This document shows, piece after piece, positions 13,855 through 64,000 of a stretch of 64,000 nucleotides of DNA. The notes under the pieces are model-generated. The model was not told the DNA's origin, ran no database searches, and saw only the letters and a program-made list of their open reading frames with translations. The stretch's first letter is position 1. Each line of letters opens with the position of its first letter. Source of the DNA: Pecten maximus (lineage: Eukaryota); the NCBI RefSeq assembly GCF_902652985.1, contig NC_047020.1, positions 31,992,001 through 32,056,000 of the forward strand. The letters run 5' to 3'. Both the position numbers and the translations under genes were made by a program.

Positions 13855-13861
13855 GGCTAAT

Positions 13862-13880
13862 CTGAAATAACAGCAAACAA
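13862..13880 (-). promoter_or_regulatory. Splice acceptor immediately upstream of the Helentron start codon
   Basis: Minus strand TTGTTTGCTGTTATTTCAG|ATTAGCCATG. Confidence 0.65.
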
Positions 13881-14639
13881 TATCTTGATTGATCATAGAC
13901 AACAAGATTAATTGATAACTGATTTGATTTCATCCTTACTTCTTATGTGTGAATCATAGCATTTTATCTCTCTTGGACATGTATTAAATAAATGTTAACA
14001 TGGTTAGTCCAGAACTAAAACACTGGCAGGTCCGCAAGAACCTAACCATGTGGCTGTATATATTAGGTTAGAGATCTGGACTGTTAAAAAACAACTAAGA
14101 CTATCCTCTGGAGGCCAACTCATACCCCCTCACTCCACTACCAATGAGTTTATTTATGGAATAATTGTAATTGTAATACAGGGTCAAGGTCAATTTAGAT
14201 TTCCGATACGAGAAGGTAAATTCTACCTCTTATAGATCAAGCACATTTATAATGTATAAGAATTATCTCTAGTAATAAAGTTTAGTTAAAATCTCGTTGC
14301 ATTTGTATGATGATGACTAATAGTAATGGGAAACCATTACAAAAGTCCCCCAAACACCTTCCATATTCCCGAAGATGCAAATGTGGTCTCTCTGGCAACA
14401 AAACAGATACAGTTGAATTTGCACCAATCAGAAGCCAGTAAATGACGGCCATTTTCTTACAATGTGAAACTGAGGTTGTAAATATATACCAAATTTCATC
14501 AAAATTGGTGCCATTTAGGCCGACAGCCATTTTGTTGAAAATTTCAACTTTTTTTTTTATACAAAATTAAAGTTCATCATGTTTTCAACCTTCCAACAAA
14601 GTTGAATTGAATTTCATTGAATAGTAAAAGAGTTATGAT

Positions 14640-20859: not shown

Positions 20860-22376
20860 TGATTTGAACCATGTGGTCTTCAATGTAAGTCAAGGTCATA
20901 CATCTGAACCAGCATACCATTGGCCTACTTAAAAATCATTTTTAAAGATTTAAACCTATTTGATCCTGTGACCTTTAATTAAGGTCAATGTCATTCATCT
21001 AAACAAATGTAGTAGCCCTTAACCCTAGCATGCTACAGGCCCAATATCAAGTCCCTCATTTGAACAAACTTGACATCCCTTCACCCCAGCATGCTACAAG
21101 CCCCAATATCAAGTCCCTGGGTCTCTTGGTTATTGAGAAGTCGTTAAAATTTTATAGTCTATTCTACCTTTGTGACCTTGAATAAAGGTCAAGGTCATTC
21201 ATTTGAACAAACTTTGTAGCGCTTCAGCCCAGCATGCTACATGCCAAATATCAAGTCCCTGGGCCCCTTGGTTATTGAGAAGAAGTTGTTTAAAGATTTT
21301 TGTCTGTTTGACCCATATGACCTTGAATGAAGGCCAAGGTCATTCATTTGAACAAACTTTGTAGCCCTTCACCCTAGCATCATACAGGCCCAATATCAAG
21401 TCCCTTGGCCTCTTGGTTATTTAGAAGTTGTTTGAAGATTATAGCTTATTTGACCCATATGACCTTGAATGAAGGTCAAGGTCATTTATTTGAACAAACT
21501 TTGTAGCCCTTCACCCCAGCATGCTACAGGCCCAATATCAAGTCCCTGGGCCTTTTGGTTATTGAGAAGAAGTTATTTAAAGATTTTTGTCTGTTTGACC
21601 CATATGACCTTGAATGAAGGTCAAGGTCATTTATTTGAACAAACTTAATAGCCCTTCACTCAAGCATGCTACAGGTCTAATATCAAGTCCCTGGGTCTCT
21701 TGGTTATTGAGAAGAAGTTGTTCGAAGATTATAGCTTATTTGACCCATGTGACCTTGAATGAAGGTCAAGGTCATTTATTTGAACAAACTTTGTAGCCCT
21801 TCACCCCAGCATGCTACAGGCCCAATATCAAGTCCCTGGGCCTTTTGGTTATTGAGAAGAAGTTGTTTGAAGATTATAGCCTATTTGACCCATGTGACCT
21901 TGAATGAAGGTCAAGGTCATTTCTTTGAACAAACTTTGTAGCCCTTCAGCCCAGCATGCTACAGGCCCAATATCAAGTCCCTGGGCCTCTTGGTTATTGA
22001 GAAGAAGTTGTTTGAAGATTATAGCCTATTTGACCCATGTGACCTTAAATGAAGGTCAATGTCATTTATTTGAACAAACTTTGTAGCCCTTCACCCCAGC
22101 ATGCTACAGGCCCAATATCAAGTCCCTGGGCCTCTTGGTTATTGAGAAGAAGTTGTTTGAAGATTATAGCCTATTTGACCCATGTGACCTTGAATGAAGG
22201 TCAAGGTCATTTATTTGAACAAACTTGGTAGCCCTTCAGCCCAGCATGCTACAGGCCAAATATCAAGTCCCTGGGCCCCTTGGTTATTGAGAAGAAGTTG
22301 TTTAAATGAAAAAGTTGACGCCGGACGCCGCACCATGGCATAAGCTCACTTGCCCTTCGGGCAGGTGAGCTAAAAA
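20860..22376 (-). mobile_element. HINE with ~10 tandem 145-bp core repeats; 3' end not recognisable
   Basis: Terminal hairpin AGCTCACTTGCCC-TTC-GGGCAGGTGAGCT (22343-22371) plus A-run. The 145-bp period includes TGACCTTGAATGAAGGTCAAGGTCA. Confidence 0.85.
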
Positions 22377-22799: not shown

Positions 22800-25700
22800 T
22801 TTTTTCTTTGGGGCATACACTGGTTCCTCCTCTTGCTCCTCTCCATTGACTCCATCAACTTTATTCTCCATCGACAATGCAGCTAGTTCAGCAGCAACAT
22901 CATCCTCCCTGTTCAATGTTAGGAACATGTTTTACATAAACAGACATGAAGTCACTTTGAAATGACCATAAACTATTGTCATACTTTGTATGTGACACTT
23001 CTTTGTGAAAACATATTGAACTAAAAAATGAGCATATTAACTATGAAGAGTTCTAGACATATTATCAACTGACCTGGTTCACCTTCCTTAATGACTAAAG
23101 CTGTTGGTAGGATGTTAAACAATACACAATCAAAAGACCTGATTTGGTCAGAAGAATCCTGACGTTTGTCCTATCATATCAAAAAATCAATTTTTAAATG
23201 CTACAATTAATGTACAAAGATACATTATTCTTTTATACAAATGTGATAACTACACAATAAAACTGAACTCAGTTTTTCTACTTGATGGTCCTTGAAAGCA
23301 TTTTTTCGCCTTTGGTTTTGACCTGATTACTGTAGGGGACATTCAATGATATAGCCAAATACTGCCCTTATGAACACATTAAAATAAAATTTACCAATCA
23401 TCATCATCCTTTTTCCTCCTGCTCTTCTTTTTTCCTGCTGACTTTGTTGCTGGTTTAACATTTTCCTCGTTTGCTTTTTCTGAATTTAAGACTGGGTCTG
23501 GAATATCATCATCACTACAAAGAAAAACATAATTTTTAGGTCAAGTTGTCAGACTGTATGGCTTATATCAGATTTATAATTATTTCTAATAAAGTACTCA
23601 AAAAAAAAAAGAAACAAACAAAATTAATTCCCAAATGAAATCTATGTTGTCCTTGACAGGCTCTACAGGTACATCCATACCCTACATTAGGACAATAACA
23701 CAATATCTCTCTGAACTGTAGACCACTAAAGAAACTTGCACCAAAATTTAAACCAACTGTTGACAGACAGACGGATGACTAGACAGCTGGTTGGACACAA
23801 ATGTATGCCTATCGTTGACTAATAATAACAAGGGCCCAATGGGCCCAAATCGCTCACCTGCAATGCAGTGATCTTTTCATTTATGGATCCTGCAGTTATT
23901 TGAAAGCATGCTACAGGACCAATATAATGTCTCTCTGCACTTTGGCTTTTCACTAAAAGTCATTTAAAGATTTAAGCATACTTGATCTACGTGACCTTGA
24001 ATGTGAGTCAGGGTCATTCATTTGAACAAACTTGGTAGCCCTTCACCCCAGCATGCTACAGACCCAATATCAACTCCCTGGGACTCTTGGTTATTGAAAA
24101 GAAGTCATTTAAAGATTTTAGCCTTTTTGACCCCTGTGACCTTGCATGAAGGTCAAGGTCATTCATTTGAACAAACTTAGTAGCCCTTTACCCCAGCATA
24201 CTACAAACCCAATATCAACTCCCTGGGACTCTTGGTTATTGAGAAGAAGTCGTTTAAAGATTTTAGCCTTTTTGACTCCTGTGACCTTGAATGAAGGTCA
24301 AGGTCATTCATTTGAACAAACTTGGGAGCCCTTCACCCCAGCATGCTACAGGCCAAATATTAGGTCTCTGGGACTCTTAGTTATTGAGAAGAAGTCGTTT
24401 AAAGATTTTAACCTTTTTGACTCCTGTGACCTTGAATGAAGGTCAAGGTCATTCATTTGAACAAACTTGGTAGCCCTTCACCCCAGCATGCTACACACCC
24501 AATATCAACTCCCTGGGACTCTTGGTTATTCAGAAGAAGTCGTTTAAAGATTTTAGCCTGTTTGATTCCTGTGACCTTGAATGAAGGTCAAGGTCATTCA
24601 TTTGAACAAAATTGGTAGCCCTTCACCCCAGCATGCTACAGACCCAATATCAACTCCCTGGGTCTTTTGGCTATTTAGAAGAAGTAGTTTAATTTTTTTT
24701 TAGCATATTTGACCCCTTTGACCTTGAATGAAAGTCAAGGTCATTCATTTGAACAAACTTGGTAGCCCTTCACCCCAGCATGCTACAGACCCAATATCAA
24801 CTCCCTGGGACAGTTGGTTATTGAGAAGAAGTCGTTTAAAGATTTTAGCCTTTTTGACCCCTGTGACCTTGAATGAAGGTCAACATTATTCATTTGAACA
24901 AACTTGGTAGCCCTTCACCCAGCATGCTACAGACCCAATATCAACTCCCTGGGACTCTTGGTTATTGAGAAGAAGTCATTTAAAGATTTTAGCCTTTTTG
25001 ACCCCTGTGACCTTGAATGAAGGTCAAGGTCATTCATTTGAACAAACTTGGTAGCCCTTTACCCCAGCATACAACAAACCCAATATCAACTCCCTGGGAC
25101 TCTTGGTTATTGAGAAGAAGTCGTTTAAAGATTTTAGCCTTTTTGACTCCTGTGACCTTGAATGAAGGTCAAGGTCATTCATTTGAACAAACTTGGGAGC
25201 CCTTCTCCCCAGCATGCTACAGGCCAAATATTAGGTCTCTGGGACTCTTAGTTATTGAGAAGAAGTCGTTTAAATATTTTAGCCTTTTTGACTCCTGTGA
25301 CCTTGAATGAAGGTCAAGGTCATTCATTTGAACAAACTTGGTAGCCCTTCACCCCAGCATGCTACAGACCCAATATCAACTCCCTGGGACTCTTGGTTAT
25401 TCAGAAGAAGTCATTTAAAGATTTTAGCCTTTTTGATTCCTGTGACCTTGAATGAAGGTCAAGGTCATTCATTTGAACCAAGGTGATTCATTTGAACAAA
25501 CTTGGTAGCCCTTCACCCCAGCATGCTACAGGTCCAAGATTAGGTCTCTGGGCCTTTTGGTTATTGAGAAGAAGTTGTTTGAATGGAAAAGTTGACGCCG
25601 GACGGACGACGGACGCCGCGCCACGGCATAAGCTCACTTGCCCTTCGGGCAGGTGAGCTAATAAACTAATAAACACCAATGTTTTCTAATTGATTTGGTC

Positions 25701-33104: not shown

Positions 33105-33968
33105 ACACTAGGGAAAGATGACCCTTCATATGCTACAGTGAAAAGGCGGGCGGCGGAATTTAAGCGCGGCCGATAGAGCCTTGATGATGACCCCCGTCCT
33201 GGAAGGCCTGTCAATGTTGCAACCCCAGAGTTGGAAATGAAAAGAGTACATTCCATTCTGACCGAGGATCTTGCGATGAGAAAGCTTTCGGCCCGATGGA
33301 TACCAAGACTTCTGACAGTTGATCAGAAGCACACCAGGCGCCCATTATCGCGTGCTAATCTGAATCTTTTAGAGGAAGATCATGCCACCTGTCTTCAGTG
33401 ATTTGTCACTATGGATGAAACATGGGTCCATCATTTTACCCCAGAGGCCAAACAGCAATCGAAACAATGGAAGCATCCTGGCTCTCACCCGCCAAAGAAG
33501 GTTGTTCCATCAGCTGGGAAGGTTATGGCCACGGTTATCTGGGATGCGGATGGTATTCTGCTGATAGATTATCTCCAAAAGGGCCAAACAATCAATGGCA
33601 CACACTATGCTTCACTGCTGATGCACTTGCGGGAAAATATTAAACTTCAGCGCAGCGGAAAACTCACTAAAGTTGTGTTATTCCATCAGGACAATGCTCC
33701 CGTTCACAAGTCTGTCATTGCCATAGCTGCCATTCACGATTGTGGCTTTAAATTTATTGAATATCCGCCTGATTCACATGATCTCGCCTCATCAGACATT
33801 CATCTATTTTCAAAACTGAAAACAGCTATTTCAGGCACCAACTTTCAGTCCGATGATGACGTCATACATGCAGTGGATGACTTTCTGAACAGTCCAGAAA
33901 AGGAGTTCTATAAAAGTGGCACAGAGGACTTGATACTAAAGGGGATTACCGGGTATGTTGAAAAATAA
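33105..33968 (+). pseudogene. Decayed mariner (DD34D) transposase
   Basis: PSYATVKRRAAEFKRGR*SLDDDPRPGRP; MDETWVHHFTPE, FHQDNAPVH, YPPDSHDLASSDIHLF. Contains a stop, frameshifts and an internal deletion. Confidence 0.92.
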
Positions 33969-36495: not shown

Positions 36496-36654
36496 TGTAA
36501 CAGTGCGCAGGATTAATTAAATTTAAATCACTGTCTCCGCTAGGGATCAAACCCGGGACCTCTGGCTTACTAGTCTTACGCTCAACCGATCGAGCTAAAG
36601 AGAAGATCTCTCTAGCCGAGCGGTATATTGCGGCTAGTATTTACCAGGGTTACA
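36496..36654 (-). mobile_element. 159-bp solo LTR containing a tRNA-derived sequence (Helenus-type TRIM-like)
   Basis: TGTAAC...GTTACA termini and 4-bp TSD TGTA (36492-36495, 36655-36658). Internal tRNA-like segment 36532-36603 has A box TAGCTCGATCGG, AGT at the anticodon position and B box GGTTTGATCCC. The anticodon stem does not pair. Confidence 0.75.
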
Positions 36655-36666
36655 TGTATAACACCA

Positions 36667-37915
36667 CTGACGAGTCCTAGAGGGACTAAACAGCTGCGTG
36701 ATGTCCCTAACATCACTAAGAGTCCTCGAGGGACTAAACAGCTGTATGATGTCCCTAACATGACTGACGAGTCTTAGAGGGACTAAACATCTGCGTGATG
36801 TCCCTAACATCATTGACGAGTCCTAGAAGGACTAAACAGCTGCGTGATGTCCCTAACATCACTAAGAGTCATAGATGAACTAAACAGCTGTTTGATATCC
36901 CTAACATCACTGATGAGTCCTAGAAGGGCCAAACAGCTGTATGATGTCCCTAACATCACTGATGAGTCCTAGAAGGGCCAAACAGCTGTATGATGTCCCT
37001 AACATCACTGACGAGTCCTAGAAGGATTAAACAGCTGTATGATGTCCCTAACATCACTGATGAGTCCTAGAAGGACAAACAGCTGTATGATGTCCCGAAC
37101 ATCACTGACGAGTCCTAGAAGGACAAACAGCTGTATGATGTCCCTAACATCACTGACGAGTCCTAGAAGGACAAACAGCTGTATGATGTCCCTAACATCA
37201 CTGATGAGTCCTAGAAGGACAAACAGCTGTATGATGTCCCGAACATCACTGACGAGTCCTAGAAGGACCAAACAGCTGTATGATGTCCCTAACATCACTG
37301 ACGAGTCCTAGAAGGACAAACAGCTGTATGATGTCCCGAACATCACTGACGAGTCCTAGAAGGGCCAAACAGCTGTATGATGTCCCTAACATCACTGACG
37401 AGTCCTAGAAGGACAAACAGCTGTATGATGTCCCTAACATCACTGACGAGTCCTAGAAGGGCCAAACAGCTGTATGATGTCCCTAACATCACTGACGAGT
37501 CCTAGAAGGACAAACAGCTGTATGATGTCCCGAACATCACTGACGAGTCCTAGAAGGGCCAAACAGCTGTATGATGTCCCTAACATCACTGATGAGTCCT
37601 AGAAGGGCCAAACAGCTGTATGATGTCCCTGACATCAGTAAGAGTCCTAGATGGAATAAACAGCTGTATGATGTCCCTAACGTCACTGATGAGTCCTATA
37701 AGGGCCAAACAGATGTATGATGTCCCTAACATCACTGACGAGTCCTAGAAGGACTAAACAGCTGTATGATGACCCTAACACCATTGATGAGTCCTAGAAG
37801 GACTAAACAGCTGTATGATGTTCTTAACATCACTGATGAGTCCTAGAAGGACTAAACAACTGTATGATGTCCCTAACATCACTGACGAGTCCTAGAAGGA
37901 CTAAACAGCTGTATG
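36667..37915 (+). repeat. 48-49-bp minisatellite (~26 copies) with hammerhead-ribozyme-like unit
   Basis: Unit CTGAYGA-GTCC-TAGAA-GGAC-(T/C/-)AA-ACAGCTGT-A-TGATGT-CCCTA-ACATCA. Confidence 0.9.
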
Positions 37916-38499
37916 ATTCAAGCCAAATTGATTTTACTGTCTCCAACTCTCAATTTGTAATTTTGTTTTGGTATTTGCTAATATCATGTGTCTTTTGTGT
38001 CATCAAACTCAACATGAACTGGAATAATCCCACTGGCCACAATAGTCACTGAAAGATACAGCCTCCTTAACTTAAGGTCAAATCTCAATTATATTTCCCT
38101 TACATTTGTCATTGTTTACCAATCTACAGACAACACATGGATCATGATAAATCAAGATCAAACATAAACAAGGAAAAAGGATGTCCTGAATAGAGGGACA
38201 TCAAGCGGAAACTGATTCCCTGATGTAAAACGTTACATTTTTCTGTTATTTTTTTTTCTATATTTTTCAGATGTAGCTCATTACAGGGAAGGATATTAAA
38301 ACGAAAGTATTGTATGAACTTTGTAAAGTATATTAGCAATTCTATGTAGGTGTGGTGTTTTTAGACCCTCTGTCTTCATAGGCCCAATGTTTCGTATGGC
38401 GTAATTAGTGATTTTTGTTTTAGACCCACTACTTTAGTACATAGATGTTTTGTTCTAGGCCAACTGCCTTAGCACAGATGATTACTGAAGAGGATTTTT

Positions 38500-39420
38500 T
38501 ATTTCAGGCCCACTACCTTAGTACAGAGGGTTTTTATTCTAGGCTCGCTGTATTAGTACAGAGGGTTTTTATTCTAGGCCTACTGCATAAGTACAGAGGG
38601 GTTTTATTCTAGGCCCGCTGCATAAGTACAGAGGGTTTTTATTCTAGGCCCGCTGCATAAGTACAGAGGGGTTTTATTCTAGGCCCGCTGTATTAGTACA
38701 GAGGGTTTTTATTCTAGGCCTACTGCATAAGTACAGAGGCTTTTTATTCTAGGCCTGCTGCATAAGTACAGAGGCTTTTTATTCTAGGCCCGCTGCATAA
38801 GTACAGAGGGTTTTTATTCTAGGCCAGCTGCATAAGTACAGAGGCTTTTTATTCTAGGCCCGCTGCATAAGTAAAGAGGCTTTTTATTCTAGGCCTGCTG
38901 TATTAGTACAGAGGGTTTTTATTCTAGTCCCGCTGTATTAGTACAGAGGGTTTTTATTCTAGGCCTACTGCATAAGTACAGAGGCTTTTTATTCTAGACC
39001 CGCTGCATAAGTACAGAGGGTTTTTATTCTAGGCCCGCTGTATTAGTACAGAGGGTTTTTATTCTAGGCCTGCTGCATAAGTACAGAGGGTTTTTATTCT
39101 AGGCCAGCTGCATAAGTACAGAGGCTTTTTATTCTAGGCCCGCTGCATAAGTAAAGAGGCTTTTTATTCTAGGCCCGCTGTATTAGTACAGAGGGTTTTT
39201 ATTCTAGTCCCGCTGTATTAGTACAGATGGTTTTTATTCTAGGCCTGCTGCATAAGTACAGAGGGTTTTTATTCTAGGCCCGCTGCATAAGTACAGAGAG
39301 TTTTGTTCTATACCTGCTGCATTAATACAGATGATTTTTAGTCAAGGCCTGCTGCATTAACATAGGATTTATTGTTATAGGCCCACTTCTTTAGTAAAGA
39401 GGATTTCTGTTCCTGGCCCG
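38500..39420. repeat. 35-bp minisatellite
   Basis: Unit GTACAGAGGGTTTTTATTCTAGGCCCGCTGCATAA. Confidence 0.95.
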
Positions 39421-41230
39421 CTGATGTCATAAAGAGTTACTGTTTTTTAGGCCAACTCCCATTGTATAAAGTGTTTTGTAGGCTCAGAACCATCAAATAC
39501 AGTTTTTCCAAGTCTACTACCTTCATGCATAAGAGTCATCCCCATTCACTGCCGTACAAAACTGCTATGTACACACATTGCCCTTATTTGTCATCTATCT
39601 ACTAAATTGGATAAAATTCGTTTTAGTCAAGACATTCATTGCAAAATGACAACAATGTATAAACTGCGGTCATCATTTGGATCAATTGCTCTTCGACACA
39701 GGGATAGGCTTTTGCGAAGAACAATTATACCTCGCCCTTCACCGAAAAATACAGCACGAGGATCCGGAACGCTTAATCCTGAAAATCCCAATAAATCCTG
39801 AATGGGAAACAGTAATTCTTGTTCCTCTTTTGTCTTGGTGTACTCTTGTCATCTACATTAATAATATGCTATATAGAGCTGTGTCCTACGTACGTCTTTG
39901 GGAAATGTCCACTTAAAATGTTCGGGTTATTGATTAAGTGTTCTCTTAAGATGACAACACATGCCACCATTAGATGTCAATAACGTTAACCTGACCTCCG
40001 AAGTGTTTATTGTTCTACTTTAATCCTTTTAACTTCCGGGTTGAACGGTAAACATTTTAGAACATGTGTGACCCAATGAACCTGTTATAAGATAGAACCA
40101 GTTGTTTAGCTTTGCATCGAATTGATGTTGAACAGTACACATTGTTTATTTACTCATCAATTACATGCTATTTAGGATACTACAGCTGTAATTTATTATT
40201 AGCTTATAATTGCTTTTATCTCTGACTCTGTTGGTCTTTTGATAAATGTAAATTTGATGTTGGTTGTTGTCCTGACCCGATTGGATTATTGTCGTGACGT
40301 CATAAATTGTAGTAAATTCACCATCTAGGGTTAGGGTTAAAAGAGAAATGAATAATCTTTTCGGAAGAGGAAGGGACAGTAGTAGGGTCATAAAGGAAAA
40401 TTTGAAATAATTTTAGTTTGAAATAATGTTGTTGTTTATTCTTTAAATATACGAATCTATATCATATATAGTAACATCATACGTATATTTGTGAATTCGC
40501 ACATTTACTTTGTATTAGGTTTTGTCTCTCAAGCGTTACGTCTACTGTTGATCTCGGTCTGAAATGTCTTTTAATTGTATTACCACTGAGTTTTACAAAA
40601 AAGTTTTATTGTAAACATTTCAAACATTTCTAAACAGTGAAAACAATACATTTTGTATGTGTATAATAATTTTTCGTAATAGGCTAGTGAATCATTTACG
40701 GTATACATGATACAAACATGTATAAATATACATATATATATATAACTTGCCGTAATAGGCTTGTGAATCATTTACGTTATATCAATATATATATGAAATA
40801 ACTTGTCGTAATAGGCTCTATACAAATTTTCCTGTTCACAAACACTAATATTATATCATATTGATATTAAAAGGAAACTATTTGGATTTGTTTTCATCTC
40901 TCTTCTTGATCATTTCCGGATCACCAAACGTTCATTCGAAATATGTCCTCGTAGACCACGTGACATTTCCGTGTCTGTGCAATTTCTGGTGATTAGATGT
41001 GCTGATTGTGCTATTGTATACAAAGCAATGAAAGAACCAGTTTTCTAAACATGCCAACACATCTGTAGATATTGGTGTGAAGAAATGGTAATAAATAAAT
41101 CAACATGAAGATATTCCCTACTTTAACACTGGTCCTACCGAATCACTCTGACAAAATCCATGACGTTTATTACAGGTATTATTATCATTATTATCAACGG
41201 GTTTAATCTCGGCTATTACGACCTGTGAAC

Positions 41231-41650
41231 GAGAGAGGAGAAGAGAATTGGTATAGTACGGTAAGAAAGGGAGATAGAGAGAGGAGAAGAGAATTGGTAT
41301 AGTAAGGTAAGAAAGGGAGATAGAGAGAGGAGAAGAGAATTGGTATAGTACGGTAAGAAAGGGAGATAGAGAGAGGAGAAGAGAATTGGTATAGTACGGT
41401 AAGAAAGGGAGATAGAGAGAGGAGAAGAGAATTGGTATAGTACGGTAAGAAAGGGAGATAGAGAGAGGAGAAGAGAATTGGTATAGTACGGTAAGAAAGG
41501 GAGATAGAGAGAGGAGAAGAGAATTGGTATAGTACGGTAAGAAAGGGAGATAGAGAGAGGAGAGGAGAATTGGTATAGTACGGTAAGAAAGGGAGATAGA
41601 GGAGAGGAGAATTGGTATAGTACGGTAAGAAAGGGGGATAGAGAAAGGAG
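41231..41650. repeat. 46-bp purine-rich minisatellite (~9 copies)
   Basis: Unit GAGAGAGGAGAAGAGAATTGGTATAGTACGGTAAGAAAGGGAGATA. Confidence 0.95.
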
Positions 41651-41699
41651 ACTGGGAAGTCGTCCTAAAATACATCTATGATTTTGAAAAGGCAACTCC

Positions 41700-41881
41700 T
41701 TATCCAAAACGTTTCCCCATCCTTACTCTGCCTAAGCCTAACAGCTGGGCCGCGTTTTCACGCCTTCTCTTTCTTGAATACCACAGAGGGTCTATTTCTT
41801 GTGGGTTGGACATTCCCATACGGGCCGACGTTTTAAGTCCTATCCGGCGGACTGGGGATTCGTCGTTATTGTTGTTAGAGA
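41700..41881 (-). CDS. Candidate terminal exon of a neuropeptide-precursor-like protein
   Basis: After CCCTAG|: SNNNNDESPVRRIGLKTSARMGMSNPQEIDPLWYSRKRRRENAAQLLGLGRVRMGKRFG*, with basic cleavage sites and a G-KR amidation signal. No upstream exon or signal peptide identified. Confidence 0.3.
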
Positions 41882-41882
41882 C

Positions 41883-42169
41883 TAGGGATTTATAGGGATT
41901 TAGAGGGATTTATAGGGATTTATAGGGATTTAGAGGGATTTATAGGGATTTAGAGGGATTTATAGGGATTTATAGGGATTTATAGGTAGGGATTTATAGG
42001 GATTTATAGGTAGGGATTTATAGGGATTTATAGGGATTTAGAGGGATTTATAGGGATTTAGAGGGATTTATAGGTAGGGATTTATAGGGATTTATAGGGA
42101 TTTATAGGTAGGGATTTATAGGGATTTATAGGGATTTAGAGGGATTTAGAGGGATTTATAGGGATTTAT
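41883..42169. repeat. 10-bp G-rich repeat (TAGGGATTTA)n
   Basis: About 27 units with GAGGG and TAGGTAGGG variants. Confidence 0.95.
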
Positions 42170-42339
42170 ATTTGTTGTCCTTTCACGATATCCTACTCTA
42201 ACACAATGTCATGTTGTATACATATCAACTGTTCAAAATGTCCACTCTCTGATGTAACCACTCTGTGACTTCCGTTTGTCTAACGTGCCGACAGTTTTAT
42301 TTTATCTAATAGTGAATTACACATTGTGAATGTTAGTAG

Positions 42340-42595
42340 AGGGGGTCATGTGACATTAAAAAGGCGGGATTATTTTGTGTTGGTGTAGTTTTTTTCAAAG
42401 TTGACGAAATGGTAAGGCAATGTAAATATACGTATTGAACAGTGGTTTTAATGTTGTTATAGTCAATATGACAGCAAGATGTATGATGGGCAAATGTAGC
42501 ATGGGAACCCTAACGGGTTCCCATGCCATTTGCCCACCAAACATCTTGCTGCCATATCGACTATAACAACATTAAAACCACTGTTCATTGCTTAA
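42340..42595. mobile_element. Fold-back element, copy 1 (~150-bp palindrome)
   Basis: TGAACAGTGGTTTTAATGTTGTTATAGTC...GGGAACCC-TAAC-GGGTTCCC...GACTATAACAACATTAAAACCACTGTTCA. A homologue lies inverted at 54340-54606. Confidence 0.8.
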
Positions 42596-42659
42596 ATGGA
42601 AGAAAGTTCAAAGTGAAGAAAAAAGTGATTGTTTCCAATTGCTAGGCGTAGAGAAGTAG

Positions 42660-43980
42660 TCATGATAGTATGAGATAGGTGATAGGACAGGCTTAAGGTA
42701 TGGGGAAGAGAAGGTTCCTTTACTTTAAATGGACGGGGAGGTACCTGCTGCTGTGATGGTATGAGATGGGTGATAGGACAGGCTTAAGAAGGTATGGGGA
42801 AGAGAAGGTTCCTTTACTTTAAATGGACGGGGAGGTACCTGCTGCTGTGATGGTATGAGATGGGTGATAGGACAGGCTTAAGGTATGGGGAAGAGAAGGT
42901 TCCTTTACTTTAAATGGACGGGGAGGTACCTGCTGCTGTGATGGTATGAGATGGGTGATAGGACAGGCTTAAGGTATGGGGAAGAGAAGGTTCCTTTACT
43001 TTAAATGGACGGGGAGGTAACTGCTGCTGTGATGGTATGAGATGGGTGATAGGACAGGCTTAAGAAGGTATGGGGAAGAGAAGGTTCCTTTACTTTAAAT
43101 GGACGGGGAGGTACCTGCTGCTGTGATGATATGAGATGGGTGATAGGACAGGCTTAAGAAGGGATGGGGAAGAGAAGGTTCCTTTACTTTAAATGGACGG
43201 GGAGGTACCTGCTGCTGTGATGATATGAGATGGGTGATAGGACAGGCTTAAGAAGGGATGGGGAAGAGAAGGTTCCTTTACTTTAAATGGACGGGGAGGT
43301 AACTGCTGCTGTGATGGTATGAGATGGGTGATAGGACAGGCTTAAGAAGGTATGGGGAAGAGAAGGTTCCTTTACTTTAAATGGACGGGGAGGTACCTGC
43401 TGCTGTGATGATATGAGATGGGTGATAGGACAGGCTTAAGAAGGGATGGGGAAGAGAAGGTTCCTTTACTTTAAATGGACGGGGAGGTACCTGCTGCTGT
43501 GATGATATGAGATGGGTGATAGGACAGGCTTAAGAAGGTATGGGGAAGAGAAGGTTCCTTTACTTTAAATGGACGGGAAGGTACCTGCTGCTGTGATGGT
43601 ATGAGATGGGTGATAGGACAGGCTTAAGAAGGTATGGGGAAGAGAAGGTTCCTTTACTTTAAATGGACGGGAAGGTACCTGCTGCTGTGATGGTATGAGA
43701 TAGGTGATAGGACAGGCTTAAGAAGGTATGGGGAAGAGAAGGTTCCTTTACTTTAAATGGACGGGAAGGTACCTGCTGCTGTGATGGTATGAGATGGGTG
43801 ATAGGACAGGCTTAAGAAGGTATGGGGAAGAGAAGGTTCCTTTACTTTAAATGGACGGGAAGGTACCTGCTGCTGTGATGGTATGAGATGGGTGATAGGA
43901 CAGGCTTAAGAAGGGATGGGGAAGAGAAGGTTCCTTTACTTTAGATGGAAGAGGAGGGTACCTGCTGCTGTGATGGTATG
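42660..43980. repeat. 91/94-bp tandem repeat (~14 copies)
   Basis: Unit TGATGGTATGAGATGGGTGATAGGACAGGCTT(AAG)AAGGTATGGGGAAGAGAAGGTTCCTTTACTTTAAATGGACGGGGAGGTACCTGCTGCTG. Confidence 0.95.
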
Positions 43981-44239
43981 GTGTAAATGTATCTTAGAAA
44001 ACGGACCTCCAGTCCCGTGTCTGTTAAGTGACTGGATGGTTTGATAACCAACGAGTATGTGGATAGCTACTCTCGGGGTGGGTAACCAAGTCAGTCTGCA
44101 TAATTGTATCGTCCAATGTGTTGTGCCAGACTCCTGGTATTCCTATACTGCGTTCCTCGTGGGTCCTAGTCAACATTATCTGTATATTATATCTAGCAGT
44201 TGTCGAGTGCGGTATGCATACTTTTCAAACGTCTATAGT

Positions 44240-47495: not shown

Positions 47496-48665
47496 ATGAA
47501 CATCCCGATCAGTGCATCCCGCCCGGACTTTGTACTACCAAACTCCACACTGAACGGAACAACTTTCCTCATCCGTCGGGATTACCTATCCAAGCTAGAA
47601 TGGCCGGGGTTGGTCCATGTGACGTTCCCGGTAATCATACCGATTCTGCTAATTCTTGGTATCATCGGGAACTCGCTGACAATTGCCGTGCTATGGCATA
47701 AGAACATGCAATCCACTACAACCATCCTGCTGTTCCGATCCCTTGTCATTACGGACATGGCGGTCAGTTTGGTGTGGTCATTGAATGGTGTATCAGAATA
47801 TTACTTATTCCAGATACCGGAAGGTCAGTCCTATTACCTGGACGTGGTTTACCCGTGTATATACATCTTCCTTCTCTACCTCATATACTTCTTCCGGGGC
47901 GTCAACATCTGGATCACGGTGACGCTCTGTGTAGAAAGGTTTATCTACGTCTGTGTTTATTACAAGGCAAACGTTATATGTACCAAGAAAAGAATCACAA
48001 TTGCCCTTGCAGTCATTGTTGGATTCTTCTTTGTGTTCAGCATACAGCAGCTGATCGAGTTTAAGCCAGTTAGCTATCCATGCTACGGAAGCCTGTGTTA
48101 CATAAATGAATTTACAGAGGTTGGAAAATCATTTTATTATTCCAAGGGGCCATTCTGGTTTAACATGTTAATGTACAACATTCTCCCGACTATACTTTTG
48201 GGATCACTTAGTATCCCCATCATCTGTAAACTCTGCACTATGTACCGGAAACGAGTACAGATGATGAACACAACTCAATCAAGTGGAACTCTTCAACGAA
48301 AGGAAACAAATGTGACCATTGTTCTTTTGCTGATCGTGTTGTTTTCGGTATTGTCAAACCTGAACGGTCCTTACCTTGTGGCCGTTTACGTATACAGCAT
48401 TTACAATACCAGTTTCTTTTATCTTATTTGTATATTCAATACTATAGTTATTCTTAACTCCTCCATAAATTTCATCATCTATGGTATTGTTGGAATTAGG
48501 TTTCGAAGAATTCTTATAAAAATGTTAAAACAGACATACTATAAAATATTAAGGAAACCTCTACCGGCCAAAGTCAGGCGTGCAACCGTGAAAGAGGAGC
48601 CAGCTTCTAATGACAATGCGATAGAGTTAACTTCGAATGACACAACGCTTTACAATGGTATTTAG
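47496..48665 (+). CDS. Class A GPCR, FMRFamide/peptide-receptor-like (389 aa, single coding exon)
   Basis: Seven hydrophobic segments; GIIGN (TM1), SLVITD (TM2), ERF (DRY position), NSSINFIIY and FRR (TM7/helix 8); N-terminal N-glycosylation sequons. Confidence 0.92.
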   Translation: MNIPISASRPDFVLPNSTLNGTTFLIRRDYLSKLEWPGLVHVTFPVIIPILLILGIIGNSLTIAVLWHKNMQSTTTILLFRSLVITDMAVSLVWSLNGVSEYYLFQIPEGQSYYLDVVYPCIYIFLLYLIYFFRGVNIWITVTLCVERFIYVCVYYKANVICTKKRITIALAVIVGFFFVFSIQQLIEFKPVSYPCYGSLCYINEFTEVGKSFYYSKGPFWFNMLMYNILPTILLGSLSIPIICKLCTMYRKRVQMMNTTQSSGTLQRKETNVTIVLLLIVLFSVLSNLNGPYLVAVYVYSIYNTSFFYLICIFNTIVILNSSINFIIYGIVGIRFRRILIKMLKQTYYKILRKPLPAKVRRATVKEEPASNDNAIELTSNDTTLYNGI

Positions 48666-48969
48666 ACCTCTAGATATGGGAGTTTACGGATCAGTGTTAA
48701 AGCTAGACTGGGATGGTTTCTTTAAGATTAAAATTATGTGGTTTGTATCTAGTTATTTAGAAACAGTGAATATTTCTTACAAAGGCAAATGGGAATGGAT
48801 ACAGCGATGTGGAAGACAATGAGACATAACTCAACATAACACGATGTGACTTAAGGATTAGTATTGTCATATCAGTTTATTTGTCAAACCTACAAAGACA
48901 ACAATGGCTTGGGATGAATGTACAGTGTGTATTGGGGATTGTAAATGGATAATAGAACATCACCATCGA

Positions 48970-49874
48970 CATTGTGTCGTAGGACTATACCAATCCTAAT
49001 GTGACATTGTGACGTAGGGTAATACCAATCCTAATGTGACATTGTGACGTAGGGTAATACCAATCCTACAGTGACATTGTGACGTAGAGTAATACCAATC
49101 CTACAGTGACATTGTGACGTAGGACGATACCAATCCTACAGTGGCATTGTAACGTAGAGTAATACCAATCCTACAGTGACATTGTGACGTAGGACGATAC
49201 CAATCCTACAGCGACATTGTGACGTAGGACGACACCAATCCTACAGTGACATTGTGACGTAGGGTGATACCAATCCTACAGTGACATTGTGACGTAGGAC
49301 GACACCAATCATACAGTGACATTGTGACGTAGGGTAATTCCAAACCTACAGTGACATTGTGACGTAGAGTAATACCAATCCTACATTGACATTGTGACGT
49401 AGGGTGATACCAATCCTACAGTGACATTGTGACGTAGAGTAATACTAATCCTACAGTGACATTGTGACGTAGAGTAATACCAATCCTACAGTGACATTGT
49501 GACGTAGAGTAATACCAATCCTACAGTGACATTGTGATGTAGAGTAATACCAATCCTACAGTGACATTGTGACGTAGAGTAATACTAATCCTACAGTGAC
49601 ATTGTGACGTAGAGTAATACCAATCCTACAGTGACATTGTGATGTAGAGTAATACCAATCCTACAGTGACATTGTGACGTAGAGTAATACCAATCCTACA
49701 GTGACATTGTGACGTAGAGTAATACTAATCCTACAGTGACATTGTGATGTAGAGTAATACCAATCCTACAGTGACATTGTGACGTAGAGTAATACTAATC
49801 CTACAGTGACATTGTGACGTAGAGTAATACCAATCCAACAGTGACATTGTGACGAAGTGTAATACCAATCCTAC
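48970..49874. repeat. 35-bp minisatellite (~25 copies)
   Basis: Unit GTAATACCAATCCTACAGTGACATTGTGACGTAGA. Confidence 0.95.
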
Positions 49875-50290
49875 ACATAAACAGCAGACACACAAACACA
49901 GAAGACACATAAAGACAGAAGACACATAAAGACAGGAGACACATAAACACAGAAGACACATAAACACAGAAGACACACAAACACAGTAGACACATAAACA
50001 CAGAAGACACATAAACACAGCAGACACCTACACACAGAAGACACATAAACACAGAAGACACATAAACACAGCAGACACACAAACACAGAAGACACATAAA
50101 CACAGAAGAGACACAAACACAGAAGACACATAAACACAGAAGACACATAAACACAGGAGACACATACACAGCAGACACATCAACACAGAAGACACATACA
50201 CACAGAAGAGACATCAACATAAAAGACACAAGAAACACACAAACACAGAAGACACATAAACACACAAATAACAAAACCACAAAAACACAA
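49875..50290. repeat. 17-bp AC-rich minisatellite
   Basis: Unit TAAACACAGAAGACACA. Confidence 0.9.
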
Positions 50291-50974: not shown

Positions 50975-52848
50975 ACCAGACGACACAACACTAGTGACAA
51001 GTTCACGTGGATTAGACGAGACAACAGTTGGGATATGACAACATCGTTCACATGACAACATATAGATGAGATAACATTGTACACGTGACAACATAGACCA
51101 GACTAAACCGTTCACGTGACAACATAGACCGGACAACACCATACACAGGGCAACATAGACCAAATAACACCGTACACGTGACAACATAGACCGGACAACA
51201 CCGTACACGTGACAACATTGACCGGACAACATCGTACACGTGACAACATAGACCAGACAACACCATACACAGGGCAACATAGACCAGATAACACTGTACA
51301 CGTGACAACATGGACCAGACAACACCGTACACGTGACAACATGGACCGGATAACACCGTACACGTGACAACATAGACCGGACAACACTATACATGTGACA
51401 ACATAGACCATACAACACAGTACACGTGACAACATGGACCAGACAACACCGTACATGTGACAACATAGACCGGACAACACCGTACACGTGACAACATAGA
51501 CCGGACAACACCATACACAGGGCAACATAGACCAGACAACACCGTACACGTGACAACGTAGACGGGACAACCCCGTACACGTGACAACATGGACCGGATA
51601 ACACCATTCACGTGACAACATAGACCGGACAACACTACACGTGACAACATAGACCATACAACACTGTACACGTGACAACATGGACCAGACAACACCGTAC
51701 ACGTGACAACATAGACCAGAAAACACTGTACACGTGACAACATAGAACAGACAACACCATACACAGGGCAACATAGACCAGACAACACCGTACACGTGAC
51801 AACATAGACCGGACAATACTGTTCACGTGACAACATAGACTATACAACACTGTACACGTGGCAACATAGACCGGAAAAGACTGTACACGTGACAACATAG
51901 ACCGGACAACACCGTACATGTGACAACATTGACTGGACAACACTGTACACGTGACAACATGGCCCAGACAACACCGTACACGTGACAACATAGACCGGAC
52001 AACACCGTACACGTGACAACATAGACCATACAACACCGTACACGTGACAACGTAGACTGGACAACACTGTACACGTGACAACATAGACCATACAACACCG
52101 TACACGTGACAACCTAGACCGGACAACACCGTACACGTGACAACATATACCATACAACACCGTACACGTGACAACATGGACCGGATAACACCGTATACGT
52201 GACAACATAGACCGGACAACACCATACACAGGGCAACATAGACCAGACAACACCGTACACGTGACAACATAGACCGGACAACACCGAACACGTGACAACA
52301 TAGACCGGACAACACCATACACAGGACAACATAGACCAGACAACACCGTACACGTGACAACATAGACCATACAATACTGTACACGTGACAACATAGATAG
52401 GACAACACCGTACACGTGACAACATAGACCATACAACACCGTACACGTGACAATATAGACCAGCCAACACCGTACACGTGACAACATGGACCATACAACA
52501 CTGTACACGTGACAACATGGACCAGACAACACCGTACACGTGACAACATGGACCAGACAAGACCGTACACGTGACAACATAGACCGGACAACACCATACA
52601 CAGGGCAACATAGACCAGACAACACCGTACACGTGACAACATAGACAGGACAACACCGTACACGTGACAACATAGACCAGACCAAACCGTACACGTGACA
52701 ACATAGACCATACAACACCGTACACGTGACAACATAGACCGGACAACACCGTACACGTGACAACATAGACCAGACCAAACCGTACACGTGACAACATAGA
52801 CCATACAACACCGTACACGTGACAACATAGACCGGACAACACTGTACA
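50975..52848. repeat. 31-bp minisatellite (~58 copies)
   Basis: Unit ACACGTGACAACATAGACCGGACAACACCGT. Confidence 0.95.
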
Positions 52849-53425
52849 CAAGAATTACCCTATAACTAGACGTTACTGTGCACCCTCGCTATGTAGAATT
52901 ATAACTAATACTAATCACTTATCATTGATTTCTTGCTTATCTTCATTCTTATAACAGTCCCGTCCATGTCCAGTTTCTTCAGTGTAGAAATCTAAATATA
53001 AGAAAATATATACGCATGTAGTTTTAAAGCTTTTTAAATCGTAGTAAGGAAAGTTATCCAAAACATTTTAACAAAGTATTTATGTTACTAGGTAAATTTG
53101 CGTTTTTTTATTTGAAAACTACTCCAACTTCTCCGTTTTATGACCTTTTTGTTACTTAAGTAGATCACTTTTACCTCAAATAATAAACTACTTAATTACG
53201 TGTGTATCTTAAATATCATGTTATGCACATATGATAATCAGGAAATCCTTATGTATGGAAGTACAGGATATCCGGATTAATAAACATTGTTTCGCCCAAA
53301 ATGTCTCTATTATGCAACACAAGGTTTATATCATTTCAAAAAACATATTCTTGTACGTTGAACTTTCCATCACCTTTTATTAGTTAAGCAATGCATATAA
53401 ATCTACATTTATATGTAATATGATA

Positions 53426-55249: not shown

Positions 55250-55699
55250 TCACAAAAACAGGACACGCTTCCTATATACCACAGCTTCGAATGGCACAAA
55301 AACAGGACACGCTTCCTATATACCACAGCTCCGAAGGGCACAAAAACAGGAAACGCTTCCTATATACCACAGCTCCGAAGGGCACAAAAACAGGAAACGC
55401 TTCCTATATACCACAGCTCCGAAGGGCACAAAAACAGGACACGCTTCCTATATACCACAGCTCCGAAGGGCACAAAAACAGGAAACGCTTCCTATATACC
55501 ACAGCTCCGAAGGGCACAAAAACAGGAAACGCTTCCTATATACCACAGCTCCGAAGGGCACAAAAACAGGAAACGCTTCCTATATACCACAGCTCCGAAG
55601 GGCACAAAAACAGGAAACGCTTCCTATATACCACAGCTCCGAAGGGCACAAAAACAGGAAACGCTTCCTATATACCACAGCTCCGAAGGGCACAAAAAA
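55250..55699. repeat. 44-bp minisatellite (~10 copies)
   Basis: Unit GCTTCCTATATACCACAGCTCCGAAGGGCACAAAAACAGGAAAC. Confidence 0.95.
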
Positions 55700-63529: not shown

Positions 63530-64000
63530 TATTCCACACTCTGGTGAGCTGAAAAATTTCATCACAAACTCTGGTGTGCCAATAACTTAATCACACACTC
63601 TGGTGAGCTGTAAAACTTTATCACACACTCTGGTGAGCCGAGAACTACATATCACACATTTGGTGAGCCGAGAACTATATCACACACTCTGGTGAGCTGT
63701 AAAACTATATCACACACTCTGGTGAGCTGTAAAACTTAATCACACACTCTGGTGAGCTGAAAAACCTTATCACACACTTCGATGAGCCGAGAACTATATC
63801 ACACACTCTGGTGAGTCGAAAAACTTAATCACACACTCTGGTGGGCCAAGAACTTTATCACACATTTGGTGAGCCGATAATTATAGAGCACATTCTGGTG
63901 AGCTGTAAAAGTAAAGCACACACTGGTGAGCTGTAGAAGTATATCACATAATCTGGTGTGCCAAAGAACTATATCACACACTCTGGTGAGCAGGAGAATT
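63530..64000. repeat. ~31-bp minisatellite running off the window
   Basis: Unit ATCACACACTCTGGTGAGCTGTAAAACTAT and variants. Confidence 0.9.

What the first reader, a model, noticed from the sequence alone, without database searches (positions are those of the whole stretch)
36667..37915. Minisatellite built from ~26 head-to-tail minimal hammerhead ribozymes, all missing catalytic G12
Seen: each + strand unit maps onto the hammerhead core. C3-A9 = CUGA(U/C)GA, varying mostly at the free position N7. Stem II is GUCC/GGAC (the GGGC variant keeps a U-G pair). Then xAA, helix III as the perfect palindrome ACAGCUGU, a GUA cleavage triplet, and stem I UGAUGU/ACAUCA closing into the next unit. Established: metazoan minimal hammerheads linked to Penelope-like elements and retrozymes have palindromic helix III and cleave as dimers, and G12 is the general base. 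Seen: G12 is T, C or deleted in every copy I read. Inference: either a dead ribozyme seeded a satellite (loss of cleavage would let multimers survive), or this is an ultra-short retrozyme-like array whose 49-nt monomer is nothing but ribozyme.
Basis: partly seen in the sequence, partly recalled or inferred. Interest (0 to 1): 0.8.

Follow-up and report, generated by a model that had tools for sequence, protein, structure and literature searches.

The report
Dead hammerhead ribozyme minisatellite in scallop
A 1.26-kb stretch of king scallop DNA is made of 26 head-to-tail copies of a 48/49-base unit that is a whole hammerhead self-cutting RNA motif and almost nothing else, but every copy lacks the one guanine that does the chemistry, so it is most likely a ribozyme fossil amplified as ordinary satellite DNA.

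Summary
Tandem Repeats Finder gives one array at 36659-37917: period 49, 25.9 copies, 91% matches.

Each + strand unit maps onto the hammerhead:
- a 6-bp helix I
- CUGAYGA
- a 4-bp helix II (GUCC/GGAC, or GGGC)
- position 12, then AAA
- the palindrome CAGCUG, then U and A

Position 12 is T in 11 units, C in 8 and deleted in 7. It is never G.

Rfam finds nothing at gathering score. At relaxed thresholds the only convincing hits in the 64-kb window are hammerhead models on this array (type III, 29-39 bits against a cut-off of 48.5; E down to 1.6e-6). A 55-nt stretch folds into the three-way junction (z = -4.1).

Near-identical cores that do carry G12 are common as solitary type I hammerheads in animal-host metagenome contigs, and those pass Rfam's cut-off.

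The array edges carry T12 plus further core lesions. The centre is homogenised as a 97-nt higher-order repeat. Core positions vary as much as stems.

Best reading: a canonical metazoan (retrozyme-type) hammerhead that was already dead and was amplified and homogenised at the DNA level. I found no Penelope-like element (PLE) reading frame, no shared flanks and no other copy. The rest of the scallop genome could not be searched. Interest is modest.

The parts
36659..37917 (+). Whole minisatellite: 26 units of 48/49 bp. Each unit is a hammerhead-derived motif plus a 5-nt linker that serves as loop 1.
   Evidence: TRF gives period 49, 25.9 copies, 91% matches. Unit parse. The flanks show no similarity to the unit, so the edges are sharp.
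37224..37278 (+). Example of one complete hammerhead-like fold (55 nt, type III permutation). Helix III pairs CAGCUG of one unit with CAGCUG of the next. Helix I is a hairpin UGAUGU-loop-ACAUCA. Then come the core CUGACGA, the helix II hairpin GUCC-UAGAA-GGAC, C at position 12 and AAA.
   Evidence: Rfam Hammerhead_3 scores 39.0 bits, E = 2.1e-6, covering model positions 1-54. The minimum-free-energy fold is the three-way junction, -17.5 kcal/mol, z = -4.07, with 0 of 200 shuffles folding as well.
37040..37620 (+). Homogenised centre: 12 nearly identical units. 48-nt units (position 12 deleted) and 49-nt units (C at position 12, mostly with GGGC) largely alternate, giving a 97-nt higher-order repeat.
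   Evidence: Pairwise unit differences are 0-4. The mean is 1.2 at lag 2 against 2.18 at lag 1. TRF also reports period 97.
36659..36892 (+). Degenerate left edge. All units have T at position 12. There are further lesions: GCG in place of GUA in three units, G5 deleted in two, C3 to T in one, and a broken helix II in the unit at 36845.
   Evidence: These units differ from the central units at 4-14 positions.
37621..37917 (+). Degenerate right edge. Position 12 is T in five units and C in one. One unit has G5 deleted, one has C3 to T, and there are helix I and helix III substitutions. The array ends 4 nt after a GTA triplet.

Best explanation
This is a hammerhead-derived pseudo-ribozyme minisatellite.

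Origin (inferred): a single canonical metazoan type I hammerhead, of the kind carried by animal non-LTR retrozymes and PLE-related repeats, became the whole repeat unit: a 44-nt motif plus a 5-nt linker. The founder already lacked the general base G12, most likely carrying U12.

Growth (inferred from the pattern): the array then grew and was homogenised as DNA, by unequal crossing-over, gene conversion or replication slippage. This region of the Pecten maximus genome is very prone to minisatellites.

RNA behaviour (fold shown, inactivity inferred): if the + strand is transcribed, neighbouring units can still fold into the hammerhead three-way junction, with helix III built from the CAGCUG palindromes of two adjacent units. 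Without a guanine at position 12 the fold should not self-cleave at any useful rate. No ribozyme function is expected.
For: Derivation from a hammerhead:
- Hammerhead models give the only convincing Rfam hits in the window, and all of them lie on the array.
- The core, helix II and helix III match the Rfam type I consensus CUGAcGAGUCC..GGACGAAAC and more than 120 natural G12-bearing hammerheads.
- The architecture equals the published canonical metazoan type: helix I 6 bp, helix II 4 bp, and a short helix III with a palindromic loop (PMC4209133).
- The minimum-free-energy fold of 55 nt is the three-way junction.

Dead:
- G12 is present in 0 of 26 units.
- G12 is the general base, and G12A costs about 1e5- to 1e6-fold in rate.
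- No unit reaches an Rfam gathering score.

Dead from the start, and evolving as DNA:
- Both diverged edges carry T12 and extra core lesions.
- Distinct variant states per site are 0.55 in the core, 0.54 in the stems and 0.91 in the loops plus N7.
- The N7 C/T polymorphism lies in a CpG.
- The centre is nearly identical, with a 97-nt higher-order period (TRF periods 97 and 146).
- The window holds about 20 other unrelated minisatellites.
Against: - Only one locus could be examined. The scallop genome itself could not be searched, so G12-intact parents, other arrays and shared flanks remain unknown.
- The repeat unit coincides almost exactly with the limits of the ribozyme. A retrozyme-like RNA route would produce that naturally; a random DNA duplication would produce it only by luck. 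There is ascertainment bias here, since the array was noticed because of this coincidence.
- In the homogenised centre the few variable sites (N7, one loop 1 base, 11.2 A/G keeping a wobble pair, position 12) are all positions a folded hammerhead would tolerate. That could hint at structural constraint, but it rests on only 4 sites.
- Inactivity of U12, C12 or a deleted position 12 in a tandem context is inferred, not measured.
Confidence: 0.7

Rival explanations
1. The array is the DNA copy of an ultra-short retrozyme. An active ancestor made up of little more than the ribozyme was cut out of multimeric RNA, circularised and reverse-transcribed by rolling circle (by a PLE enzyme), and the multimeric cDNA was integrated. 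G12 was lost afterwards and the loss spread by homogenisation.
For: - The unit limits coincide with a complete hammerhead plus 5 nt.
- Animal type I hammerheads typically sit in tandem repeats that are expressed as circular RNAs (PMC7229834).
- Retrozyme family consensus lengths down to 51 bp have been reported (preprint 10.64898/2026.07.22.740005).
- The 97-nt higher-order repeat could equally be a dimeric template.
Against: - No unit carries G12, not even at the little-homogenised edges, where T12 is uniform.
- The array ends do not lie at the cleavage site, and no target-site duplication is visible.
- No PLE reverse transcriptase or GIY-YIG reading frame was found among window ORFs of 120 aa or more, or among ORFs of 85 aa or more within about 10 kb.
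- A 49-nt circle cannot form helix III by itself.
- The array fails the preprint's own criterion of two consecutive complete hammerhead motifs.
Confidence: 0.12
2. The array is the central tandem repeat of a DNA transposon, a non-autonomous Helentron or a tandem-repeat-bearing MITE, as is common for bivalve satellite-like arrays. The transposon captured a hammerhead-derived segment as filler.
For: - An apparently intact 3221-aa Helentron-type ORF lies in the same window.
- In the Pacific oyster, satellite-like arrays are carried by Helentron non-autonomous elements (PMC7492417).
- The window is crowded with short arrays.
Against: - No inverted repeats were found around the array.
- The array flanks match no other array's flanks and no sequence next to the Helentron ORF.
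- Oyster HINE repeats have units of 100-500 bp, mostly 160-180 bp.
- The test is weak, because only 64 kb could be compared.
Confidence: 0.1
3. The units are still catalytic. A U or C at position 12, or the deletion variant read as A12, works in the extended tandem or dimeric context, possibly with another group acting as general base.
For: - Apart from position 12, about 15 of the 26 units have a flawless core and flawless helices.
- Rare natural core variants do keep activity (PMC3088659).
- From my own knowledge, the N3 pKa of uridine is close to the N1 pKa of guanosine.
Against: - G12A alone costs about 1e5- to 1e6-fold in rate.
- Three different states at position 12, including a deletion, coexist. 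That is the signature of an unconstrained site.
- Position 12 is not among the tolerated natural core variants named.
- The array scores below every Rfam cut-off.
Confidence: 0.04
4. The resemblance is chance: an ordinary minisatellite whose unit happens to look like a hammerhead.
For: All 26 copies descend from one unit, so the resemblance counts as a single event. Rfam gathering scores are not reached.
Against: - A single unit gives E of about 5e-5 against 4227 families over the whole 64 kb.
- The match covers core, helix II, helix III and loop 2, close to natural hammerheads that pass Rfam's cut-off.
- None of the other arrays in the window gives such a hit.
Confidence: 0.03

Closest known systems
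Animal non-LTR retrozymes (tandem repeats with type I hammerheads, e.g. Mytilus galloprovincialis, Acropora millepora, axolotl; PMC7229834)
   Same: Head-to-tail repeats, each carrying a type I hammerhead with a 6-bp helix I, a 4-bp helix II and a short palindromic helix III that can pair between neighbouring copies. Low GC. Also found in a bivalve.
   Different: Published units are about 150-450 bp (350-390 bp in mussel) and carry non-ribozyme sequence. Here the unit is 48/49 bp and is essentially only ribozyme. Every copy lacks G12. No RNA evidence is available.
Very short vertebrate non-LTR retrozyme families (consensus lengths 51-972 bp; preprint 10.64898/2026.07.22.740005)
   Same: A unit length of about 50 bp, meaning little more than the ribozyme, has a reported precedent.
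   Different: Those families were selected for complete hammerhead motifs in at least two consecutive units. This array fails that criterion. It is a mollusc locus rather than a vertebrate one.
Hammerhead-bearing satellite DNAs: newt satellite 2, Schistosoma Sm-alpha, Dolichopoda pDo500 (PMC6155905, PMC2837043)
   Same: Satellite DNA whose transcripts can form hammerheads, with dimeric 'double hammerhead' pairing through helix III.
   Different: Those have units of about 330-500 bp with intact, experimentally active cores.
PLE-associated minimal hammerheads (min-HHR; PMC4209133)
   Same: Palindromic helix III, and dimeric action is expected.
   Different: The min-HHRs described there have a long helix II (7-8 bp), a short helix I (4-5 bp) and often a bulged base, and they sit in PLE terminal repeats. 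The scallop unit has the canonical 4-bp and 6-bp helices, and no PLE was seen nearby.
'Cryptic mutant hammerheads', meaning decayed genomic copies with core mutations (PMC3088659)
   Same: Hammerhead-like sequence with a disqualifying core mutation. Presumed to be non-functional.
   Different: Those are scattered single copies. Here one dead copy has become a 26-unit array.

Membership tests
Hammerhead ribozyme (Rfam clan CL00010) | Core C3 U4 G5 A6 N7 G8 A9 | tested here: met
   21 of 26 units read CTGA[C/T]GA. 2 have C3 to T and 3 have lost G5.
Hammerhead ribozyme (Rfam clan CL00010) | G12, the general base | tested here: not met
   T in 11 units, C in 8, deleted in 7, G in 0 of 26. No alternative register places a G there: reading the deletion variant as A12 also turns the 15.1-16.1 pair into C-G.
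Hammerhead ribozyme (Rfam clan CL00010) | A13 A14 A15.1, U16.1 and H17 (not G) | tested here: met
   A13, A14 and A15.1 are present in 26 of 26 units. U16.1 plus A17 is present in 22 of 26. Three edge units have C16.1 and G17, and one has U17.
Hammerhead ribozyme (Rfam clan CL00010) | Three helices around the core | tested here: met
   Infernal aligns the full length of the type III model. The minimum-free-energy structure of 37224-37278 is the three-way junction, z = -4.07. In a 147-nt transcript the palindromes compete, and only helices I and II survive in the centroid structure.
Hammerhead ribozyme (Rfam clan CL00010) | Rfam gathering score | tested here: not met
   No hit at gathering threshold. 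Best scores are 39.4 bits against 48.5 for type III and 25.9 against 34 for type I. G12-bearing metagenome relatives score 35-52 bits on the type I model.
Hammerhead ribozyme (Rfam clan CL00010) | Self-cleavage | not testable with these tools
   Needs an in vitro transcription assay.
Animal non-LTR retrozyme | Tandem repeat with at least two consecutive units holding complete hammerhead motifs (criterion of preprint 10.64898/2026.07.22.740005) | tested here: not met
   It is a 26-unit tandem repeat, but no unit has a complete core.
Animal non-LTR retrozyme | Unit length in the published range | tested here: inconclusive
   At 48/49 bp the unit is far below the 150-450 bp range and just below the 51-bp minimum in the preprint.
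Animal non-LTR retrozyme | Expression as self-cleaved linear and circular RNA; mobilisation by a PLE | not testable with these tools
   No transcriptome access. No PLE reading frame was found in the window among the ORFs scanned, which is weak negative evidence.
PLE min-HHR | Long helix II (7-8 bp), short helix I (4-5 bp), location in PLE terminal repeats | tested here: not met
   Helix II is 4 bp and helix I is 6 bp. No PLE was found nearby.
Helentron non-autonomous element (HINE) central repeat | Conserved left and right flanking modules shared by all copies; insertion in T-rich sites without target-site duplication | tested here: inconclusive
   No shared flanks or inverted repeats within the 64-kb window. 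Other genomic copies could not be fetched.

The most novel reading that the evidence does not exclude
The array is the genomic footprint of the smallest retrozyme-like replicon yet seen. That would be a 48/49-nt RNA (or a 97-nt dimer) consisting of a hammerhead alone, amplified through circular RNA and rolling-circle reverse transcription. In the stronger version, its position-12 variants still cleave in the tandem double-hammerhead context.
Probability: 0.06. Interest if true: 0.75.

Novelty: new variant of a known kind. Interest (0 to 1): 0.3.

Why it matters
If the best reading is right, this is a tidy example of how a ribozyme motif from a mobile element can be stripped to its bare catalytic fold, die, and live on as ordinary satellite DNA. 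It is useful in three ways:
- as a caution for ribozyme annotation, because it sits just under the Rfam cut-offs;
- as a data point on how transposable elements give rise to satellites in bivalves;
- as a natural 'G12-null' control set for hammerhead studies.

It would matter much more only if the RNA route or residual catalysis were shown. That would set a lower size limit of about 49 nt for retrozyme-like replicons.

Tried and rejected
1. Alternative registers that would put a G at position 12 (shortening helix II, or reading the deletion variant as A12). None gives a legal core.

2. Looking for a G12-intact copy elsewhere in the window. The Rfam E-value scan of all 64 kb and motif searches with mismatches found none outside the array.

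3. Looking for the satellite in other collections:
- Satellite-specific patterns found nothing in viral contigs or in prokaryote genome contigs.
- The single metagenome scan returned only solitary canonical hammerheads and no hammerhead-only arrays.

4. Using the reading frames that the 48-nt units open by accident (37039-37311 on +, 37005-37298 on -) as handles to find sister arrays through protein databases. There were no homologues, and neither product is on record. This route could only have found arrays whose unit length is a multiple of three.

5. Transposon context. No inverted repeats. No flank shared with other arrays or with the Helentron. The flanks show no residual similarity to the unit. 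No Pfam hit in 8 small ORFs within about 10 kb.

6. A PLE link for the metagenome relatives. Long open frames near them were a BEL/Pao element, Kelch and guanylate cyclase genes, or unassigned. None was a PLE.

7. A test for selection on the fold. Variant states per site do not separate core from stems, and the sample is too small and too non-independent for more.

It was redone by coordinates.

Full report
**Source.** The window has no N. An intronless receptor ORF in it (47496-48665) is encoded, letter for letter, on NCBI assembly GCA_902652985.1, record LR736843.1. That accession is the one cited in the king scallop Pecten maximus genome paper. From my own knowledge it is the xPecMax1.1 assembly. 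By arithmetic, the window is about LR736843.1:31,992,001-32,056,000 and the array about 32,028,659-32,029,917. It is not human sequence.

**Observation.** Tandem Repeats Finder reports one array at 36659-37917: period 49, 25.9 copies, 91% matches, with weaker periods at 97 and 146. I cut it at the putative cleavage site into 26 units of 48 or 49 nt and aligned each to a reference unit taken from the window. A unit reads as follows:
- helix I 3' strand UGAUGU
- CCCUA
- helix I 5' strand ACAUCA
- CUGA(C/U)GA
- GUCC, UAGAA, GGAC (GGGC in 7 units)
- position 12
- AAA, CAGCUG, U, A

Counts per feature:

| Feature | Count |
|---|---|
| Intact C3-A9 | 21/26 |
| A13-A15.1 | 26/26 |
| GUA triplet | 22/26 |
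| CAGCUG | 23/26 |

Position 12 is T in 11 units, C in 8 and absent in 7. About 15 units are flawless apart from position 12.

**Is it a hammerhead by model?**
- At Rfam gathering thresholds the window gives nothing.
- With E-value reporting, the only convincing hits in the 64 kb are hammerhead models, and all lie on this array. The other sub-threshold rows (MIR1507, AfaR) fall far below their cut-offs. Hammerhead_3 scores 29-39 bits (cut-off 48.5; E = 1.6e-6 in a 2-kb search, 5e-5 for the whole window). Hammerhead_1 scores 23-26 bits (cut-off 34).
- The Infernal alignment shows the true topology. Helices I and II are closed hairpins inside a unit. Helix III pairs the CAGCUG palindrome of one unit with that of the next. 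This makes a 55-nt, type III-permuted hammerhead with a gap or mismatch exactly at G12.
- The 55-nt stretch 37224-37278 folds into that three-way junction as its minimum-free-energy structure (-17.5 kcal/mol, z = -4.07).
- A lone 49-nt unit keeps helices I and II but cannot form helix III. In a 147-nt transcript the palindromes compete with each other.
- The roughly 20 other minisatellites in the window serve as a negative control. None gives a hammerhead hit.

**Natural relatives.** One metagenome scan used the core with position 12 left free.
- These contigs carry animal genes (Kelch, guanylate cyclase, a BEL/Pao element), so they are host DNA in host-associated metagenomes. The host was not verified.
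- The hits are solitary type I hammerheads with the same GUCC/GGAC helix II, the same ACAGCUGU helix III and similar A-rich loops.
- 107 of 123 have G12. The rest have A (13), C (2) or T (1). 115 of 123 have a GUC triplet.
- A sample of them passes Rfam's type I cut-off (35-52 bits). The Rfam type I consensus itself reads CUGAcGAGUCC-CAAAUA-GGACGAAAC.
- The scallop unit is therefore one position away from the commonest animal hammerhead core. Its helix sizes (I 6 bp, II 4 bp, III 2 bp plus a palindromic tetraloop) are those published for canonical metazoan type I hammerheads, which work as dimers (PMC4209133). They are not those of the PLE min-HHR.

**Dead or alive.** G12 is the general base (PMC6155905). 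G12A slows a full-length hammerhead by about 1e5- to 1e6-fold (PMC2553840). Published screens disqualify any core mutation (PMC3088659). A pyrimidine or a deletion at this site is expected to abolish useful cleavage. This is inferred, not measured.

**How the array evolved.**
- The two edges are the most diverged units (4-14 differences from the centre). They all carry T12 apart from one C12 unit on the right.
- The edges also carry additional lesions: GCG triplets, a deleted G5, C3 to U, and a broken helix II.
- The centre (37040-37620) is almost uniform. Units two apart are more alike than neighbours (1.2 against 2.18 differences). This is a 97-nt higher-order repeat in which deletion and C12/GGGC variants largely alternate.
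- This is the usual picture of DNA-level homogenisation. It suggests T12 was the founder's state.
- Distinct variant states per site are 0.55 in the core, 0.54 in the stems and 0.91 in the loops plus N7. The core shows no special protection.
- The N7 C/T polymorphism lies in a CpG.

**Context.**
- The flanks have no similarity to the unit. They match nothing else in the window and show no inverted repeats.
- A weak tRNA-like segment, probably a SINE head, abuts the left end on the minus strand.
- No PLE reading frame was seen.
- The window holds an apparently intact 3221-aa Helentron-type ORF and many unrelated minisatellites. In oysters, such arrays ride on non-autonomous Helentrons (PMC7492417). 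That link could not be tested here.

**Comparison with known systems.**
- Hammerhead-bearing tandem repeats are well known: newt satellite 2, Sm-alpha, pDo500, and retrozymes of 150-450 bp including one in a mussel.
- A 2026 preprint reports family consensus lengths down to 51 bp.
- Decayed 'cryptic mutant' hammerheads are also known.
- What is unusual here is the combination: a unit that is only ribozyme, 26 copies, and every copy lacking G12.
- It fails the defining tests for an active hammerhead and for a retrozyme, so I file it as a hammerhead-derived pseudo-ribozyme satellite, a variant of a known kind.

**Limits.**
- The scallop genome and transcriptome could not be searched.
- Searches of viral and prokaryote collections were blank.
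- Two protein-level searches that used accidental ORFs in the 48-nt units were also blank.

**Verdict.**

| Reading | Confidence |
|---|---|
| Dead-ribozyme satellite amplified as DNA | 0.7 |
| Former ultra-short retrozyme | 0.12 |
| Transposon cargo | 0.1 |
| Residual catalysis | 0.04 |
| Chance resemblance | 0.03 |

Interest is 0.3.

Noticed in passing
window 4240-13905 (-): One uninterrupted 3221-aa ORF with OTU protease, DUF6570, Helitron_like_N (Rep), PIF1-type helicase and a C-terminal Exo_endo_phos (AP-endonuclease-like) domain. This is the domain set of an autonomous Helentron, and it appears intact. It contains in-frame tandem repeats (63-bp units at 9649-10222; 12-bp units, 37 copies, at 13133-13576).
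   Followed up: partly
window, whole: Extraordinary density of unrelated minisatellites. Examples: 65 bp x15 at 1590-2573; 35 bp x27 at 38496-39423; 46 bp x9 at 41231-41651; 94 bp x14 at 42663-43980; 35 bp x26 at 48968-49875; 31 bp x58 at 51037-52849; 44 bp x10 at 55251-55698; 30 bp x15 at 63535-63991. None resembles a hammerhead.
   Followed up: partly
window 21058-22303 and 23957-25478; also 75-245: A 145-bp satellite occurs in two blocks about 1.6 kb apart, with 90% matches within each block. A diverged piece of the same repeat lies at the window start, next to the Helentron.
   Followed up: no
window 36532-36604 (-): A tRNA-like segment with D-arm and T-arm boxes is recognisable (Rfam tRNA 12.7 bits, below cut-off; ARAGORN finds no tRNA). 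It is probably the head of a tRNA-derived SINE. The SINE's presumed 5' end would then lie within about 15 nt of the left edge of the hammerhead array. A Pol III promoter in it would point away from the array.
   Followed up: partly
window 40000-44000: Strong G-over-C strand skew (+0.29 to +0.49) across the purine-rich arrays at 41231-43980.
   Followed up: no
window 33411-33968 (+): A 185-aa ORF with a mariner-type transposase DDE domain (Transposase_1, E = 1e-20). It is a fragment of a Tc1/mariner element.
   Followed up: no
window 47496-48665 (+): An intronless 389-aa rhodopsin-family/Srw-like GPCR gene. It was used only to identify the source assembly.
   Followed up: partly
window 37039-37311 (+) and 37005-37298 (-): Where several 48-nt units (a multiple of three) follow each other, the array opens artefactual 90-aa and 97-aa reading frames with 16-residue repeats. 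They have no homologues and are not on record as genes. Automatic gene callers could mistake them for genes.
   Followed up: yes
loci L001-L120 (metagenome contigs): Hundreds of solitary canonical type I hammerheads sit in a few conserved flanking-sequence families on contigs that carry animal genes. About 13% have lost G12, mostly to A. Almost none is in a short tandem arrangement.
   Followed up: partly
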